From Aplysia californica (Eukaryota), in the NCBI RefSeq assembly GCF_000002075.1, contig NW_004798204.1:148332-203297 (forward strand): a stretch of 54,966 bases of DNA. The letters run 5' to 3'. Below are positions 20,066 through 41,952 of the stretch, in pieces. The notes below the pieces were generated by a model that worked only from the letters and a program-made list of their open reading frames with translations, was not told where the DNA came from and made no database searches. Position 1 is the stretch's first letter. Each line of letters opens with the position of its first letter. Made by a program: the position numbers and the translations under genes.

Positions 20066-21365
20066 TGGCTTCCCTGTTATTTACAAAGGAAGGACACGCC
20101 TGCAGTACAAACAAATCCATAAATATTATTTTTCATAATTTCACCAGTTACAGTTATTATTCAACCTGTCTCTTATTACTGTCTGTACTTTTTTGCCGGC
20201 ATATTTTGTCATCTTTACTGCCTATTAAATTTTAAGCTATTCATGGTTCTTCTTTTCTTTCTTGGACTAACGGAGACAACCGAATTTGAGTCTTTGTTCT
20301 TTGCCGATTTCGTCTCTGTATTAACATAAGCTGTCAAAGATCATGTAAATTGATATTTCAAATATTTTCATTTTTATCCTATTCTTGATCGGATTTTAAT
20401 TTTCTGTCAAATTCATTTTTGAACAGCACAAACAGAAACAAAATTACAAACTCATTCTCATCAGTTAACGCACTCTCACCCCAAATACACGAACGAACAC
20501 ACATAAAAGCACACACANNNNNNNNNNNNNNNNNNNNNNNNNNNNNNNNNNNNNNNNNNNNNNNNNNNNNNNNNNNNNNNNNNNNNNNNNNNNNNNNNNN
20601 NNNNNNNNNNNNNNNNNNNNNNNNNNNNNNNNNNNNNNNNNNNNNNNNNNNNNNNNNNNNNNNNNNNNNNNNNNNNNNNNNNNNNNNNNNNNNNNNNNNN
20701 NNNNNNNNNNNNNNNNNNNNNNNNNNNNNNNNNNNNNNNNNNNNNNNNNNNNNNNNNNNNNNNNNNNNNNNNNNNNNNNNNNNNNNNNNNNNNNNNNNNN
20801 NNNNNNNNNNNNNAGAGTCACAAGATCTTATAGTTTTATAATTGAGCTGAAGATGTAGTTTCACCTCTAGTACGTTCCTTTCTTTCAAGGAATTTCTTAC
20901 TCTAGGTTTAGTATCTGCACACTATCTTCCTTATTTGTAAGTATTGTGTTTAAATTTTAATGTCAACAAAAGGTAGTTGATTAATCGCGCATGCACCGCT
21001 GGACGTTTATGGCTCTTTGGAAACCGCGTCCTTGTTATTTGTATTGACACCTGTGTATCAATGGAGTCCTGATGATCCACGAGCCGCTATTGCCTCACAA
21101 AGCCAACGACGCTAAGCTGTTGTAAACACTGGTCAACAAGAGTGAATGGGAAGGAAAATCCTCACAACAAAAACCGTTCCAGTGTTATTTCACACGTACA
21201 GCCATGTTGTCTCAAATCTATAGAGACGTAAACAAAAGATTTTGATTCATGTTGGACTATTGTGCGGTCGGTCTAAGAAAAACGCTAGAGGCGGAAACAA
21301 CAACTGCGTAAAATCTACTGACCAAGCTACGGTCATTCTTCTCGCTGAAGCGTACAAGGATTTTG

Positions 21366-21436
21366 ATTGGCTGTGGTAGAAGGAAGGGAGGAGCATCATG
21401 GAATATAAAACCAGCACTCCCGGGCATCCTCCAGTT
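21366..21436 (+). promoter_or_regulatory. Core promoter of the kinase gene (repeated in all six units)
   Basis: ATTGG (reverse CCAAT) at 21366, TATAAAA at 21404-21410, and an Inr-like CCAGTT with its A at 21433, 29 nt after the start of the TATA box. Confidence 0.65.
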
Positions 21437-21522
21437 CATCGTATCGCTTTTGCAGTGAGAGGACGTTGGTGTTTCAGTGTACCCGAGTGTCATTTCTGCA
21501 CATCTCTCGTGTATTTTCAAGT

Positions 21523-23074
21523 ATGGAAAGTGTTGCAGTTCCTGCAGTGAGGTTCATTGCTGGTGACTTTTGGTCATCCGTGAAGATGAGGCAAGTGCGT
21601 GTTCTGTGCCAGAAGACGAGCACACCCGTCCAAGTGTTGGAAGCGGCAATGGAAGACGACGACTCCATTCGCAAGGTCATCAAGAGGATAGGTCTCACTG
21701 ACCGCCGAGGCCGCGACAGTTGGCGTGAGGTTTTCAAGGAAATCAGCTTCATGGGCAACGTCTCACACCCGCATATCATGAAGATGGACTGGGCGGTGAG
21801 GTGCAAGGGCTTTGTAGCTATTTGCATGCCTCTGTGCTCACGAGGATCTTTGCACGATGCACGCCACAGTCTAAACGGAGAGCAGATAGAGCGTTACTTT
21901 GTGCAGATCGCCTGTGCACTGAGATATCTTCACGTTAGGTGCGCTGTGCACGGGGACGTGAAGCCCGCCAACATTTTGCTAGATGAATCCAACAACGCTA
22001 TTCTTGGCGACCTGGGGATGTCCCGCTTCTTGGCCCGCGGACAAGATCGAGTGAGAAGCTGGAGTATACTTGGAACAAGAGGCTTCCTCGCTCCAGAGAT
22101 CCAGTCTGACGTCATCGTAGATCCTTTTCTGGTGAGTAACTGCAGACTTTTCTTTTCAGTGAGCTTGATTGTTTGCTAGTTTATCACTATTTTGTTTAGC
22201 TTCCTTTTGTTGTGCAGGTTTGTAGTTGCTTTGTTTGTTTCTTTCTCGGTCTATCTGTGCGTTTTGCGTTCGTTTTGTTATTCTCTTGTTGTTTCTGTTG
22301 TTAGTAGTAATGTTTTCCCTTACCTGTTGTTTGTAAGCTGTGATTTTCTTTTCCTAAGGCCATGTATGTATTACTTCCTTCCTTTGTTTTTCTGTCGTGG
22401 TTTTGTTTATTCCTGTCTGCTGCTGTGTTTATAATTCATTATCTTTATTGATTTACCTTTTCTTCTTTCTGAGTGCTCCGTGAACGTCTTTGTATACTAC
22501 GCGACTGTTATTTCTAGGTACCATTTGCTCACTCTTGACAAACACTATAGATCTCTGACATTTTTGTCTCTACGCAGACGGACGCGTACGCACTTGGAGC
22601 AACGCTGTGGTGTCTGGTCTTCAAACGTAACCCTCGCAACTGGGAGGATCTTCTGACCGCCATGGAGTCCGACAGCACCCTGCTGCCACGCTTGGGTTTC
22701 CACAGGTAAGCACGCCATTCTTTGGGTTCTTTAGCACAGCCTTTTTAATTTTTAAAACCTAGTTCTGCTCAGCTCTCTTAACTGTTATCATTACTGCTTT
22801 TAATTCCTCCTCGGTGAAAGATGAATTGTTTCTTTAGCACGTTCTTGCTTGATGTCTGTCACGTTTAAGCTCTAGCCATGTCATCCTATTTACAATCTAC
22901 TTGCTTTCTCTCGAAGTTGCCAGTTGCTTATCTCAGTGCCATTGTTTACTCCACAGATTCGTTCTCTCCAGGCTTGTACAGAACAACCCACGACTCCGAC
23001 TTTCAGTCTGCGATCTCCTGGCATTTCTGCGTTTGCGCTTTGAGAGGTTCAGGGTAATCATAGACTGTCTGTAA
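21523..23074 (+). CDS. Ser/Thr-type protein kinase, copy 1; exons 21523-22131, 22578-22705, 22957-23074 (284 aa)
   Basis: KVIK, KEISFM, HPHI, HGDVKPANIL, GDLG, GTRGFLAPE, TDAYALG and NPRLR motifs; GT-AG introns in phases 0 and 2 keep the frame to TAA. Confidence 0.92.
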
Positions 23075-39225: not shown

Positions 39226-40047
39226 AGGGTGCAAGTGCTGTATTTACATGCTTTATTTTCACTTCACTAACAAACGTTTTTTCTTAGTTTTCTGATTTTT
39301 CTCAGCTCCCGTTGAATTAATATAACTAATACCCTAACTGCTCATTACAAAAATTGAAGTACTAATTGGACTACTAATTTGCTGACAAATGTTTCTACTC
39401 AACAACATGTGCCCCGTGTTTTGTACCTGTGTCTGTCTTAAACTACAGATAACTAGAAGACAGACCACTTGGTCCTGCGGATGGTGTGAAGAAGGAAGAA
39501 AAGCAGGAAGCAGGTCACACCAAGGCAAGCATCGCGTTTGTAACATCACAGCTGAGATGATCATGTGCGTAATTACCAGTCGACGAGGACTTGCACATGT
39601 TGCTGGTGAGTAGTTACCTTCAGCCACTAAGGTGGGGTTTCTAAGGTGGGGTTTCTACCTAGAAAGTGATCTCAACATTTTCTCTATTTAATCTTAACAC
39701 AATTGTCTCCCTGTTATTGGAAAACTTAGGTTCTGTCTAACACGCTGGTTTTTCTCTCGTTTGTTTTTTTCTGTGTTTCCATTAATATGTTACTAACGAG
39801 CAGTAATTATTCCAAACACTGTGGGGGCAGTGCTTGGTTTAGTCGACACCTTTGGGTTTTTTTGTGTTCCAATAACTACTTTTTAATTAATAATCTTTAC
39901 AATATGAACTGTAGCTCCAACTTACTCTTGTTAGCAAAATGTACTAATCTTATCATTTACATTCGTGTACTGACCCAACTCATAACACTAACATTTTTAA
40001 CCTTACTAACGACTAATATAACCCAGACGTGAGCGCTCGGTAGCGCC

Positions 40048-40123
40048 GTCTTTTTAATCAGGCCTCGGTGTACAGTGTACTCTGAGACGGTCCCAAGCCC
40101 GTGGAAACTGAGAGGGAAAAGAC
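40048..40123 (+). ncRNA. Twister ribozyme copy 5
   Basis: Identical to copy 1. Confidence 0.92.
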
Positions 40124-41697
40124 CATGACGACAACAAGAACAAAAATCAAAGTAGTATCTCATCGGTGTGTTTGTGATTCCATAGAGTAAATTGTTTGAC
40201 AGATATTTACGAAAACGTGTTTTTCTGGGGTTTTGTTTTGGGCTTGAAGTGTAAGTTTAACATTCTTCAAACTCATTTACACATCGCACCGTCAAAATAA
40301 GATTTAAACTGATACCAATTTGAGCGTTAGAAAACCTGTAGTCAAATTAAAAGAAATATTTCGTTTGGTGTCACAGACCACAAGCCAATAACAGAAGAAA
40401 AAAATATCAGAAGTTACCGATTGCAGTATACAGAATAAGTAGTTTCTTTGTTGTTGTTTCTTTACCTTTGGAAAACAAGTAAATGCCAGGTTCCGTCCCC
40501 AAGATATCCACGGAGAATGTTAATTTTTGATCCCTTCTTTCTTGGACTAACGGAGACAACCGAATTTGGGTCTTTGTTCTTTGCCGATTTCGTCTCTGTA
40601 TTAACATAAGCTGTCAAAGATCATGTAAATTGATATTTCAAATATTTCATTTTTATCCTATTCTTGATCGGATTTTAATTTTCTGTCAAATTCATTTTTG
40701 AACAGCACAAACAGAAACAAAATTACAAACTCATTCTCATCAGTTAACGCACTCTCACCCCAAATACANNNNNNNNNNNNNNNNNNNNNNNNNNNNNNNN
40801 NNNNNNNNNNNNNNNNNNNNNNNNNNNNNNNNNNNNNNNNNNNNNNNNNNNNNNNNNNNNNNNNNNNNNNNNNNNNNNNNNNNNNNNNNNNNNNNNNNNN
40901 NNNNNNNNNNNNNNNNNNNNNNNNNNNNNNNNNNNNNNNNNNNNNNNNNNNNNNNNNNNNNNNNNNNNNNNNNNNNNNNNNNNNNNNNNNNNNNNNNNNN
41001 NNNNNAGTTTTATAATTGAGCTGAAGATGTAGTTTCACCTCTAGTACGTTCCTTTCTTTCAAGGAATTTCTTACTCTAGGTTTAGTATCTGCACACTATA
41101 TCGCTTATTAGTAAGTATTGTGTTTAAATTTTAATGTCAACAAAAGGTAGTTGATTAATCGCTCATGCACCGCTGGACGTTTATGGCTCTTTGGAAACCC
41201 GCGTCCTTGTTATTTGTATTGACACCTGTGTATCAATGGAGTCCTGATGATCCACGAGCCGCTATTGCCTCACAAAGCCAACGACGCTAAGCTGTTGTAA
41301 ACACTGGTCAACAAGAGTGAATGGGAAGGAAAATCCACACAACAAAAACCGTTCCAGTGTTATTTCACACGTACAGCCATGTTGTCTCAAATCTATAGAG
41401 ACGTAAACAAAAGATTTTGATTCATGTTGGACTATTGTGCGGTCGGTCTAGGAAAAATGCTAGAGGCGGAAACAACAACTGCGTAAAATCTACTGACCAA
41501 GCTACGGTCATTCTTCTCGCTGAAGCGTACAAGGATTTGGATTGGCTGTGGTAGAAGGAAGGGAGGAGCATCATGGAATATAAAACCAGCATTCCCGGGC
41601 ATCCTCCAGTTCATCGTATCGCTTTTGCAGTGAGAGGACGTTGGTGTTTCAGTGTACCCGAGTGTCATTTCTGCACATCTCTCGTGTATTTTCAAGT

Positions 41698-41952
41698 ATG
41701 GAAAGTGTTGCAGTTCCTGCAGTGAGGTTCATTGCTGGTGACTTTTGGTCATCCGTGAAGATGAGGCAAGTGCGTGTTCTGTGCCAGAAGACGAGCACAC
41801 CCGTCCAAGTGTTGGAAGCGGCAATGGAAGACGACGACTCCATTCGCAAGGTCATCAAGAGGATAGGTCTCACTGACCGCCGAGGCCGCGACAGTTGGCG
41901 TGAGGTTTTCAAGGAAATCAGCTTCATGGGCAACGTCTCACACCCGCATATC
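41698..41952 (+). pseudogene. Truncated kinase copy 6
   Basis: Identical to the other copies up to ...SHPHI (CATATC at 41952), then unrelated sequence. Confidence 0.9.

What the first reader, a model, noticed from the sequence alone, without database searches (positions are those of the whole stretch)
20255..41952. Amplified cassette: promoter + intact protein kinase gene + twister self-cleaving ribozyme in every ~4 kb tandem unit
Seen: five complete units, each with a TATA promoter, an intact 3-exon kinase and one same-strand twister ~810 nt after the stop. No RT or transposase is present in the readable part of the unit. Established: eukaryotic twisters mostly sit at 5' ends of RTE-type retrotransposons, and one-ribozyme-per-repeat arrays (hammerhead retrozymes) are short and non-coding. 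I know of no described twister-punctuated protein-coding gene array. Inference: the ribozyme could (a) cut the kinase transcript as a terminator, insulator or decay switch that limits read-through between copies, or (b) cut read-through RNA into ~4 kb monomers with 5'-OH and 2',3'-cyclic phosphate ends that could be circularised or retro-mobilised in trans, i.e. a gene-carrying retrozyme-like or selfish element. Retained introns and array ends that do not coincide with the cut site favour DNA-level amplification.
Basis: partly seen in the sequence, partly recalled or inferred. Interest (0 to 1): 0.9.

Follow-up and report, generated by a model that had tools for sequence, protein, structure and literature searches.

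The report
Kinase genes each trailed by twister ribozyme
Each copy of a small sea-hare (Aplysia) kinase gene in this tandem array is followed on the same strand by a well-preserved self-cutting "twister" RNA, and the same pairing holds across the whole gene family and in other snails, so the ribozyme looks like a selected part of a host gene rather than transposon debris.

Summary
There are five complete units of about 4 kb, 98.7-99.4% identical. Each has an intact three-exon, 284-codon kinase gene and an identical full-length type-P1 twister 811 nt after the stop, on the same strand. The N gaps lie in the spacer and interrupt no claimed feature.

The twister is not a passenger.
- Its 102-nt module (leader hairpin, extended P1, twister) occurs 44 times in the Aplysia californica genome, always on contigs that carry a kinase paralog.
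- The module is 98/102 identical between kinase clades whose four-fold sites are near saturation.
- Twister subtype follows the kinase tree exactly.
- All helices, one pseudoknot, the P1 extension and the leader keep pairing through compensatory changes.
- The pairing recurs in Candidula unifasciata, Physella acuta and a marine metagenome contig.
- Conservation lies upstream of the cut, not downstream, the reverse of a retrotransposon 5' ribozyme.

Most likely it cuts the kinase transcript in cis. Whether that forms a poly(A)-independent 3' end or acts after a poly(A) site is unresolved, because three poly(A) RNA runs showed no expression. The circular or retrozyme reading is not supported; the array arose by DNA duplication.

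The scan had already noted this pairing on other pieces of this genome. No paper describing it was found.

The parts
20255..41952 (+). Head-to-tail tandem array: left partial unit (spacer only), five complete units, right partial unit (promoter plus first ~85 codons)
   Evidence: Unit identities 98.7-99.4%; left edge; right edge. N blocks at 20518-20813, 24607-24880, 28653-28905, 32680-32926, 36702-36972 and 40769-41005 all lie in the spacer.
21404..21410 (+). TATAAAA box 119 nt upstream of the ATG of unit 1 (putative promoter; repeated in each unit)
   Evidence: Read directly from the sequence. The 21414-21513 stretch is 80-96% identical to paralog loci. Not tested functionally.
21523..23074 (+). 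Kinase gene, unit 1: exons 21523-22131, 22578-22705, 22957-23074 (284 codons plus stop)
   Evidence: Pfam Pkinase 98 bits on exon 1; GT/AG at all junctions; same exon structure and C-terminus as NCBI Aplysia models P0002 and P0008.
23116..23848 (+). CTAAY-rich region between stop codon and twister (11 of the 12 CTAAY motifs of unit 1)
   Evidence: 6-13 motifs in the 330 nt before type-A twisters against 1-2 expected, in seven of the eight A1/A2 loci tested (not C688); not enriched before type-B twisters.
23857..23958 (+). Unit 1 ribozyme module: leader hairpin 23857-23885, twister 23886-23955, P1 extension to 23958; predicted cut between U23890 and A23891
   Evidence: RF03160 58.5 bits, full model. 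Block edges from the alignment and from read-contig break points at 23857 and 23958. P1 extension seen.
25573..27125 (+). Kinase gene, unit 2: exons 25573-26181, 26629-26756, 27008-27125
   Evidence: Open, GT/AG kept, 5 amino-acid differences from unit 1.
27906..28007 (+). Unit 2 ribozyme module (twister 27935-28004)
   Evidence: Exact copy of the twister; 102/102 block match.
29599..31151 (+). Kinase gene, unit 3: exons 29599-30207, 30655-30782, 31034-31151
   Evidence: Open, GT/AG kept, 3 amino-acid differences.
31933..32034 (+). Unit 3 ribozyme module (twister 31962-32031)
33619..35171 (+). Kinase gene, unit 4: exons 33619-34227, 34675-34802, 35054-35171
   Evidence: Open, GT/AG kept, 1 amino-acid difference.
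35955..36056 (+). Unit 4 ribozyme module (twister 35984-36053)
37673..39225 (+). Kinase gene, unit 5: exons 37673-38281, 38729-38856, 39108-39225
   Evidence: Open, GT/AG kept, 1 amino-acid difference.
40022..40123 (+). Unit 5 ribozyme module (twister 40051-40120)
41698..41952 (+). Truncated sixth kinase copy (first ~85 codons, then unrelated sequence)
   Evidence: also listed with 92% identity over residues 1-92.

Best explanation
The window holds a recent DNA-level tandem amplification of one member of a gastropod family of small (~280 aa) protein kinase genes. Every transcription unit in this family carries, downstream of the stop codon on the sense strand, a conserved cis module: a short leader hairpin, a P1 helix extended by 2-6 bp, and a type-P1 twister ribozyme.

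Shown here: the module is inherited together with the kinase gene, it is the most conserved sequence of the unit, and it keeps the twister fold through compensatory changes. It is therefore a selected part of the gene and not a passenger.

Inferred: RNA polymerase II reads through the module, and the twister cuts the nascent kinase transcript between U23890 and A23891. The upstream RNA then ends in hairpin-U5 with a 2',3'-cyclic phosphate, and the ribozyme body stays on the discarded downstream piece.

My preferred sub-model (about 0.45) is that this cut defines, or removes the tail from, the mRNA 3' end. That would give a poly(A)-independent, hairpin-capped transcript whose amount or location is controlled through the CTAAY-rich 3' region. 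The alternative (about 0.3) is that the cut falls just after a normal poly(A) site and serves termination or insulation.
For: Restriction to the gene family:
- 44 leader-twister junctions in the genome and 0 in the reversed control, on 12 contigs that all carry kinase paralogs.
- 36 of 40 scored blocks have a listed kinase exon 1 lying 1.7-2.7 kb upstream on the same strand.
- 29 of 57 best Rfam twister hits have a kinase exon 1 within 12 kb upstream on the same strand, against about 0.06 expected by chance.

Constraint:
- Between the C934 and C127 clades, amino-acid identity is 0.52, four-fold sites differ at 0.57-0.63, and the flanks cannot be aligned, yet the block is 98/102 identical.
- The block is the best-conserved 100 nt of the whole unit.

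Co-divergence: the five twister subtypes need only the minimum of 4 changes on the kinase tree (shuffled mean 13, 0 of 200 as low), and the type A/B split is the deepest branch at 100/100 support.

Fold:
- 98.6% of cells are paired, and 5 pairs show changes on both sides (3 in P2, 1 in P3, 1 in pseudoknot T1).
- The P1 extension and the leader hairpin keep pairing with different bases in each lineage.

Other species: a kinase followed by a same-strand twister in Candidula unifasciata (65.6 bits), Physella acuta (53.5 bits) and metagenome contig L067 (63.3 bits, 66/70 identical to Aplysia although the kinases share 47% identity).

Direction of conservation: upstream of the cut (leader, CTAAY-rich region), not downstream.
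Against: - No RNA evidence. Three poly(A) RNA-seq runs gave 0-2 reads on the unit, so neither expression nor cleavage is shown. The tissue is unknown, and poly(A) selection would miss a tail-less RNA.
- The Rfam score is below the gathering threshold (58.5 against 67.2).
- Poly(A) hexamer evidence is mixed. They are weakly depleted upstream of the twister in the A1 and B loci (4 observed, 9.1 expected, 43 of 1000 shuffles as low). But L067 has AATAAA between the stop and the twister, and Candidula has many.
- The Bulinus truncatus homolog has no twister within 28 kb.
- Some type-B twister loci show no kinase in the 10 kb I hold.
- The Physella copy has a core A-to-C change, and one Candidula copy has a T1 mismatch, so some copies may be decaying.
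- Short-tract gene conversion could add to the near-identity of the block.
Confidence: 0.6

Rival explanations
1. Terminator or insulator acting after the poly(A) site. The mRNA is made by ordinary cleavage and polyadenylation upstream of the twister. The ribozyme then cuts the read-through RNA, which helps polymerase release and stops read-through, promoter occlusion and splicing between neighbouring units.
For: L067 has AATAAA 18 nt after the stop and 55 nt before the twister. Many family members sit in head-to-tail arrays with 1.5-2 kb between the twister and the next promoter. Homology between clades ends about 100 nt after the twister.
Against: No conserved poly(A) hexamer lies between the stop and the twister in the A1 clade; ATTAAA at 23193 is not conserved. 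CTAAY motifs run right up to the twister, which suggests that stretch is kept in a functional RNA. The module is also kept at solitary genes and in an inverted pair. From general knowledge, a ribozyme cut leaves a 5'-OH, which is a poor entry point for the 5'-3' exonuclease used in torpedo termination.
Confidence: 0.22
2. Passenger relic. The twister is the 5' end of an RTE-type non-LTR retrotransposon, or a non-autonomous derivative, that landed next to a kinase gene and was co-amplified with it, with no role for the host.
For: Twisters at the 5' ends of RTE retrotransposons are reported (PMC7761336). An APE endonuclease ORF lies about 2 kb downstream of a type-B twister in L046. Some type-B copies have no kinase in the sequence held. 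An earlier scan note reports decayed twisters inside an old MITE in this genome.
Against: There is no reverse transcriptase or endonuclease in the unit, and the gaps are too small to hide one. Homology between type-B loci ends before the APE ORF, and the twister sits in the middle of that homology, not at its 5' edge. For type A, conservation is upstream of the cut and stops 3 nt after the ribozyme. All 44 type-A copies are on contigs that carry a kinase paralog. Twister subtype follows the kinase tree. The pairing is present in three other organisms.
Confidence: 0.05
3. Gene-carrying retrozyme-like or selfish element. Read-through RNA across the array is cut into ~4 kb monomers with 5'-OH and cyclic-phosphate ends, which are circularised or retro-mobilised.
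For: There is one same-strand ribozyme per unit in head-to-tail arrays.
Against: Introns are retained in all copies. The array ends fall in the spacer and in exon 1, not at the cut site. The module is kept at solitary genes and in an inverted pair, where no monomer can form. The contigs laid on the unit showed no joints (DNA-like run only). Known retrozymes are short and non-coding (PMC4918200, listed).
Confidence: 0.04

Closest known systems
Type-P1 twister ribozyme (Rfam RF03160)
   Same: Full-length match. All core nucleotides are present, along with P1, P2, P3, P4 and both pseudoknots, and the U|A cleavage site. The helices covary.
   Different: Scores just below Rfam's gathering threshold. 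It has a long P3, a P1 extended by 2-6 bp, and a conserved leader hairpin that are not in the model. It is tied to a protein-coding host gene family.
Twister at the 5' end of RTE-superfamily retrotransposons (mentioned in PMC7761336)
   Same: A eukaryotic twister placed so that it cuts a longer co-transcript.
   Different: In those elements, conservation continues downstream into the APE/RT body and the upstream sequence is arbitrary. Here the upstream gene and leader are conserved and the downstream sequence is not, and there is no RT.
Discontinuous hammerhead ribozyme in rodent CLEC2 3' UTRs (reviewed in PMC6765202)
   Same: A self-cleaving ribozyme downstream of the stop codon of a host mRNA in a duplicated gene family. 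There, cleavage separates the coding part from the poly(A) signal and lowers expression.
   Different: A different ribozyme class. Here the ribozyme is contiguous rather than split, has a leader hairpin at the new 3' end, and is conserved far more deeply (heterobranch gastropods). Its position relative to the poly(A) site is not established.
Poly(A)-independent 3' ends: histone mRNA stem-loop, MALAT1 3' end made by RNase P, U6 snRNA oligo-U cyclic-phosphate end (general knowledge)
   Same: The predicted product ends in a stable hairpin followed by U5 with a cyclic phosphate, and the genes are tandemly repeated like histone genes.
   Different: The cut would be made by the RNA itself and not by a protein or RNP nuclease. 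None of this is shown for these transcripts.
Hammerhead retrozymes and satellite-type ribozyme repeats (PMC4918200)
   Same: One ribozyme per direct repeat.
   Different: Those units are a few hundred to about a thousand nt, non-coding and propagated through circular RNA. These units are about 4 kb, carry an intron-containing gene, and were duplicated as DNA.

Membership tests
Twister ribozyme, type P1 (RF03160) | Match to the whole covariance model at or above the curated gathering score | tested here: not met
   58.5 bits against 67.2; the full model 1-68 is matched, E 3.3e-12 in a 1.6-kb scan. Relatives reach 60.5-65.6 bits. The shortfall comes from the long P3 insert and one U-U pair.
Twister ribozyme, type P1 (RF03160) | Conserved core nucleotides and the U|A cleavage dinucleotide | tested here: met
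   All upper-case consensus positions of the Rfam alignment are matched.
Twister ribozyme, type P1 (RF03160) | Helices P1, P2, P4 and pseudoknots T1, T2 supported by covariation | tested here: met
   98.6% of cells paired; double changes in P2 (3 pairs), P3 (1) and T1 (1); slid controls collapse. Further P3 and P1-extension changes in other species. P4 and T2 never vary, so they are uninformative.
Twister ribozyme, type P1 (RF03160) | Self-cleavage of the transcript | not testable with these tools
   Needs an in vitro transcription and cleavage assay, or mapping of 5'-OH / cyclic-phosphate ends.
Retrotransposon 5' ribozyme (RTE/R2/L1Tc type) | Ribozyme at the 5' edge of a repeated element whose body, encoding endonuclease and reverse transcriptase, follows downstream | tested here: not met
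   No such ORF in the unit. Type-A conservation stops 3 nt after the ribozyme. In type-B loci the twister is internal to the shared segment, and that segment ends before the APE ORF.
Retrotransposon 5' ribozyme (RTE/R2/L1Tc type) | Dispersed copies at unrelated genomic sites | tested here: not met
   All 44 type-A junctions are on kinase-bearing contigs. Type B is less clear.
Retrozyme / ribozyme-bearing circular RNA element | Short non-coding unit bounded by ribozymes, propagated through RNA | tested here: not met
   Unit is about 4 kb with an intron-containing gene; array ends are not at the cut site. Circles themselves are not testable here.
3' UTR ribozyme acting on a host mRNA (CLEC2-like) | Ribozyme lies between the stop codon and the functional poly(A) site | tested here: inconclusive
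   It is downstream of the stop in every lineage (72-1821 nt; 3.3 kb at C688). The poly(A) site is unknown, hexamer evidence is mixed, and no RNA reads were obtained.
3' UTR ribozyme acting on a host mRNA (CLEC2-like) | Conserved with the gene among paralogs and orthologs | tested here: met
Eukaryotic protein kinase (Pfam PF00069) | Kinase domain above the Pfam cut-off, with catalytic-loop D-x-K-x-x-N, a DFG-like Asp and an APE motif | tested here: met
   98.2 bits against a cut-off of 31.7. HGDVKPAN, DLG and APE are present in the exon 1 translation. The glycine-rich loop is degenerate in the A clade, so activity is not assured.

The most novel reading that the evidence does not exclude
In heterobranch gastropods a whole family of protein-coding genes makes its mRNA 3' ends by twister self-cleavage and not by cleavage and polyadenylation. 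The resulting messages are capped at the 3' end by a conserved hairpin followed by U5 with a 2',3'-cyclic phosphate. This would be a further route of metazoan mRNA 3'-end formation, beside polyadenylation and the histone stem-loop, and the first assigned host function for a eukaryotic twister.
Probability: 0.3. Interest if true: 0.92.

Novelty: new variant of a known kind. Interest (0 to 1): 0.8.

Why it matters
Thousands of twister ribozymes are known, but almost none has a demonstrated role in eukaryotes. The only proposed context is retrotransposon 5' processing.

Here a twister module is tied to a host protein-coding gene family. It has co-diverged with that family and is kept in sea hares, land snails and freshwater snails. 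It is under much stronger constraint than the coding sequence beside it.

That gives a concrete, testable system for asking what a genomic twister does to a host messenger RNA: 3' end formation, tail removal, termination or regulated decay. It also supplies a natural design, a leader hairpin plus a long P1, for ribozyme-based expression tools.

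Tried and rejected
- Default Rfam scan of the window: no hit, because the twister scores below the gathering threshold. 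It was recovered with the E-value threshold.
- RNA evidence: three poly(A) raw-read runs gave 0-2 reads. The fourth run behaves as DNA: even depth over introns and spacer, and no joints. Its depth spike of about ten-fold at the twister agrees with 44-49 genomic copies against five here, but says nothing about RNA.
The association statistics therefore rest on coordinates.
- I first read the APE ORF in L046 as proof that type B heads a retrotransposon. I withdrew this after one search showed that inter-locus homology ends before that ORF.
- Short TARA/ENA contigs L051-L058 and L066 have too little downstream sequence to test for a twister.
- The metagenome pattern scan returned generic twisters with no kinase nearby.
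- L069 (an assembly cited only in a marigold study) has just weak partial kinase matches, and L068 is a protist-like multi-kinase ORF. Neither is a family member, so both were set aside.
- The exon-like segment 23301-23456 has stops and indels in paralogs, so it is not a coding exon.
- P0002 and P0025 are not on record for context look-up.
- Literature searches for twister with Aplysia, kinase, tandem or mollusc found nothing relevant.
- The joined (spliced) kinase protein was not built or searched. All searches used exon 1 or single exons by reference.
- The N gaps were not filled.

Full report
**1. The observation**

The window is contig C934:148332-203297 of a 927-Mb assembly. It is Aplysia californica: NCBI names paralogous proteins from that species on contigs of the same lengths as C804, C2028 and C688.

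Five complete repeat units lie between six N blocks and are 98.7-99.4% identical to one another. The array starts at 20255 inside spacer sequence; 20255-20486 matches unit positions 24370-24600. It ends near 41952, inside exon 1 of a sixth copy that breaks off after about codon 85.

Each complete unit has an open three-exon gene. In unit 1 the exons are 21523-22131, 22578-22705 and 22957-23074, giving 284 codons. GT/AG is present at every junction, and copies differ from unit 1 by 0-5 amino acids. Exon 1 is a protein kinase domain (Pfam PF00069, 98 bits). NCBI's models of paralogs, P0002 and P0008, have the same exon structure and C-terminus.

I searched exon by exon by reference. I did not build or submit the joined protein.

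**2. The gaps**

The N blocks (237-296 N) sit in the spacer, about 650 nt after the twister and about 710 nt before the next ATG, beside CA-rich low-complexity sequence. No exon, promoter or ribozyme crosses them. They are too short to hide a transposase or reverse transcriptase. The unit period is therefore approximate. I did not fill them.

**3. The ribozyme**

Rfam's default scan finds nothing. With the E-value threshold, RF03160 (twister-P1) matches its whole model at 23886-23955 (+) with 58.5 bits, against a gathering score of 67.2. Exact copies occur in the other four units. All core nucleotides and the U|A cleavage site (23890|23891) are present.

**4. The twister is not a dispersed repeat**

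- The 102-nt block 23857-23958 has 49 candidate copies in the genome. All 40 that were scored lie on contigs with kinase paralogs, and 36 have a listed kinase exon 1 lying 1.7-2.7 kb upstream on the same strand.
- A pattern for the leader-twister junction finds 44 copies on 12 contigs and none with the reversed pattern. Every one of those contigs carries a kinase paralog.
- Among the 57 best Rfam twister hits genome-wide, 29 have a kinase exon 1 within 12 kb upstream on the same strand and one on the opposite strand. The chance rate is about 0.001 per site.

**5. Constraint**

| Clade pair | Amino-acid identity | Four-fold sites differing | Block identity |
|---|---|---|---|
| C934 vs C344 | 0.80 | 0.30 | 100/102 |
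| C934 vs C127/C436/C2028 | 0.52-0.55 | 0.57-0.63 | 98/102 |

For the more distant pair, the sequence on either side of the block cannot be aligned. Across the unit, the block is better conserved than any exon window.

A DNA run laid on the unit shows contigs from paralogous loci joining and leaving exactly at 23857 and 23958. It also shows about ten-fold higher k-mer depth only there, which fits 44-49 genomic copies against five in this array.

**6. Two twister types that follow the kinase tree**

- Type A (70 nt) follows the window's clade and its 52-56% relatives.
- Type B (59-61 nt) follows kinases that are about 30-37% identical.

A maximum-likelihood tree of 22 kinase ORFs places the five twister subtypes (A1, A2, B1, B2, B3) with the minimum possible 4 changes. 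The shuffled mean is 13, and 0 of 200 shuffles are as low. The A/B split is the deepest branch, supported 100/100. Near-copies inflate such clustering, but the deep congruence is not explained by that.

**7. The fold is maintained**

On ten distinct Aplysia variants, 98.6% of pair cells are standard pairs. Five pairs change on both sides: three in P2, one in P3 and one in pseudoknot T1, where GUCCC/GAGGG becomes GUCUC/GAGAG. Sliding the partners by 1-3 columns removes the signal.

Beyond the Rfam model, P1 is extended by 2-6 bp with different bases in each lineage:

| Lineage | P1 extension |
|---|---|
| Aplysia type A | GUC/GAC |
| Aplysia type B | AAACA/UGUUU |
| L067 and Candidula | AUC/GAU |
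| Physella | UAUA/UAUG |

A hairpin sits directly 5' of it in every lineage except Aplysia B1, again with different stems:

| Lineage | Leader hairpin stem |
|---|---|
| Aplysia type A | GCGC/GCGC |
| Aplysia type B (B2, B3) | GACUU/AAGUC |
| Candidula | GAACC/GGUUC |
| Physella | GACC/GGUC |

They explain both edges of the conserved block.

**8. Other species**

A profile of the family searched against 1.8 billion representatives led to genomic context for four relatives.

| Locus | Source | Kinase | Twister |
|---|---|---|---|
| L067 | ENA metagenome contig | Intronless, 273 aa, 211-1032 (+), 47% identical to the window's exon 1 | 1105-1174 (+), 63.3 bits, 66/70 identical to Aplysia type A, leader kept |
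| L072 | Candidula unifasciata | 6001-6852 (+) | 8674-8745 (+), 65.6 bits; another at 670-741 |
| L071 | Physella acuta | 6001-6970 (+) | 7604-7673 (+), 53.5 bits, with one core change |
| L070 | Bulinus truncatus | More distant homolog | None in 28 kb |

Species names come from the accession tables in PMC13155389 and from bioRxiv 10.1101/2021.01.23.427926.

The snail proteins align end to end with the Aplysia family. They have the same length and the same ...IDSL ending.

The distance from stop codon to twister varies from 72 to about 1,820 nt (3.3 kb at one locus, C688), but the strand and order never change.

**9. What it is not**

*Not a retrotransposon 5' ribozyme.* There is no RT or endonuclease in the unit. 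Conservation lies upstream of the cut and stops 3 nt after the ribozyme. The one APE ORF I found, L046:2868-3482, lies beyond the end of inter-locus homology, and the type-B twister is internal to that homology. I withdrew my earlier reading on this point.

*Not a retrozyme-like RNA-propagated element.* Introns are retained, the array ends are not at the cut site, and the module persists at solitary genes (C343, C326, C464) and in an inverted pair (C804).

Two type-B loci (C102, C1589) show no kinase in the 10 kb held. Linkage of type B is therefore strong but not universal.

**10. How it probably works**

*Shown:* a selected, vertically inherited, sense-strand twister module lies downstream of the stop codon.

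*Inferred:* transcription runs through it, and it cuts the nascent RNA at 23890|23891.

Three features favour an effect on the upstream product.
- The conserved hairpin would become the 3' terminus (hairpin-U5 with cyclic phosphate).
- 11 of the 12 CTAAY motifs of unit 1 lie between the stop and the twister. They are enriched in both A clades (6-13 observed against 1-2 expected). From general knowledge, this motif resembles branch-point and STAR-protein sites.
- The only canonical poly(A) hexamer upstream of the twister in unit 1 is not conserved.

Several points count against certainty.
- Depletion of poly(A) hexamers is weak.
- L067 has AATAAA between the stop and the twister.
- Candidula has many hexamers in that stretch.
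- No RNA reads were obtained. Those libraries were poly(A)-selected and of unknown tissue.

I therefore rate 3' end definition or tail removal at about 0.45, post-poly(A)-site termination or insulation at about 0.3, and other readings at the remainder.

**11. Comparison and novelty**

The closest known cases are:
- the twister class itself;
- RTE 5' twisters (PMC7761336), which have the opposite polarity of conservation;
- the CLEC2 3' UTR hammerhead (PMC6765202), which has the same logic but a different ribozyme and much shallower conservation.

Full-text searches found no report of a twister linked to a kinase family or to Aplysia.

Earlier notes of this scan, s1-721667 and s1-680729, describe the same pairing on other Aplysia contigs. 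So this is not new within the scan. I re-derived it independently and added:
- the land-snail and freshwater-snail cases;
- the tree congruence;
- the four-fold-site contrast;
- the P1 extension and leader covariation;
- the polarity argument against a retrotransposon origin.

Noticed in passing
L053:62-176, L054:126-240, L055:19-133: On three marine metagenome contigs, a full-length U5 snRNA gene (96-98 bits) sits about 500 nt upstream of a kinase family gene on the same strand. This suggests the kinase lies in a repeated unit that also contains an snRNA gene in that organism.
   Followed up: no
window 23457 and 23857-23862: A GTGAGT donor-like site at 23457 is conserved among the four A1 loci compared (GT kept in all). 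The conserved block begins CCCAG|AC just after ACTAAC branch-point-like motifs. Together these could mark a 3' UTR intron whose last exon is the hairpin plus twister. No RNA evidence.
   Followed up: partly
window 23056 (exon 3): An internal GT donor lies six codons before the stop. At the homologous site in the C804 paralog, NCBI model P0001 uses it to join the kinase to exons of a short-chain dehydrogenase-like gene. This may be a read-through artefact or a real alternative isoform.
   Followed up: no
window 5941-8008 (-) and 12503-13432 (-): ORFs with DUF7869 (E 1e-10) and an OTU-like cysteine protease domain (E 2.9e-5) lie upstream of the array, together with a 45-bp tandem repeat at 7282-7616. 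They look like transposon-derived genes.
   Followed up: partly
window 19503-19717 and 43927-44615: An (AC)n microsatellite lies just before the left edge of the array, and a 213-bp tandem repeat (3.2 copies) lies after the right edge.
   Followed up: no
L046:2868-3482 (C102): An APE endonuclease ORF (PF14529, E 2.8e-18) of a non-LTR retrotransposon is inserted in a cluster of type-B twister units that show no kinase in the 10 kb held.
   Followed up: partly
L071:7604-7673; L072:8674-8745: The Physella twister has CCCCAGCC where the conserved CCCAAGCC is expected, and one Candidula copy has a C-A mismatch in pseudoknot T1. Some copies outside Aplysia may be losing activity.
   Followed up: no
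L070:5331-5377 (-) and 5562-5607 (-): Histone 3' stem-loop matches (35.1 and 25.5 bits) lie just upstream of the Bulinus truncatus kinase homolog that lacks a twister.
   Followed up: no
C326:805143-805354 and 831226-831562; C343:721779-721899: Short tandem repeats of the ~50-nt CTAAC-rich stretch that precedes the twister (window 23804-23860) occur upstream of the module at two solitary kinase loci.
   Followed up: no
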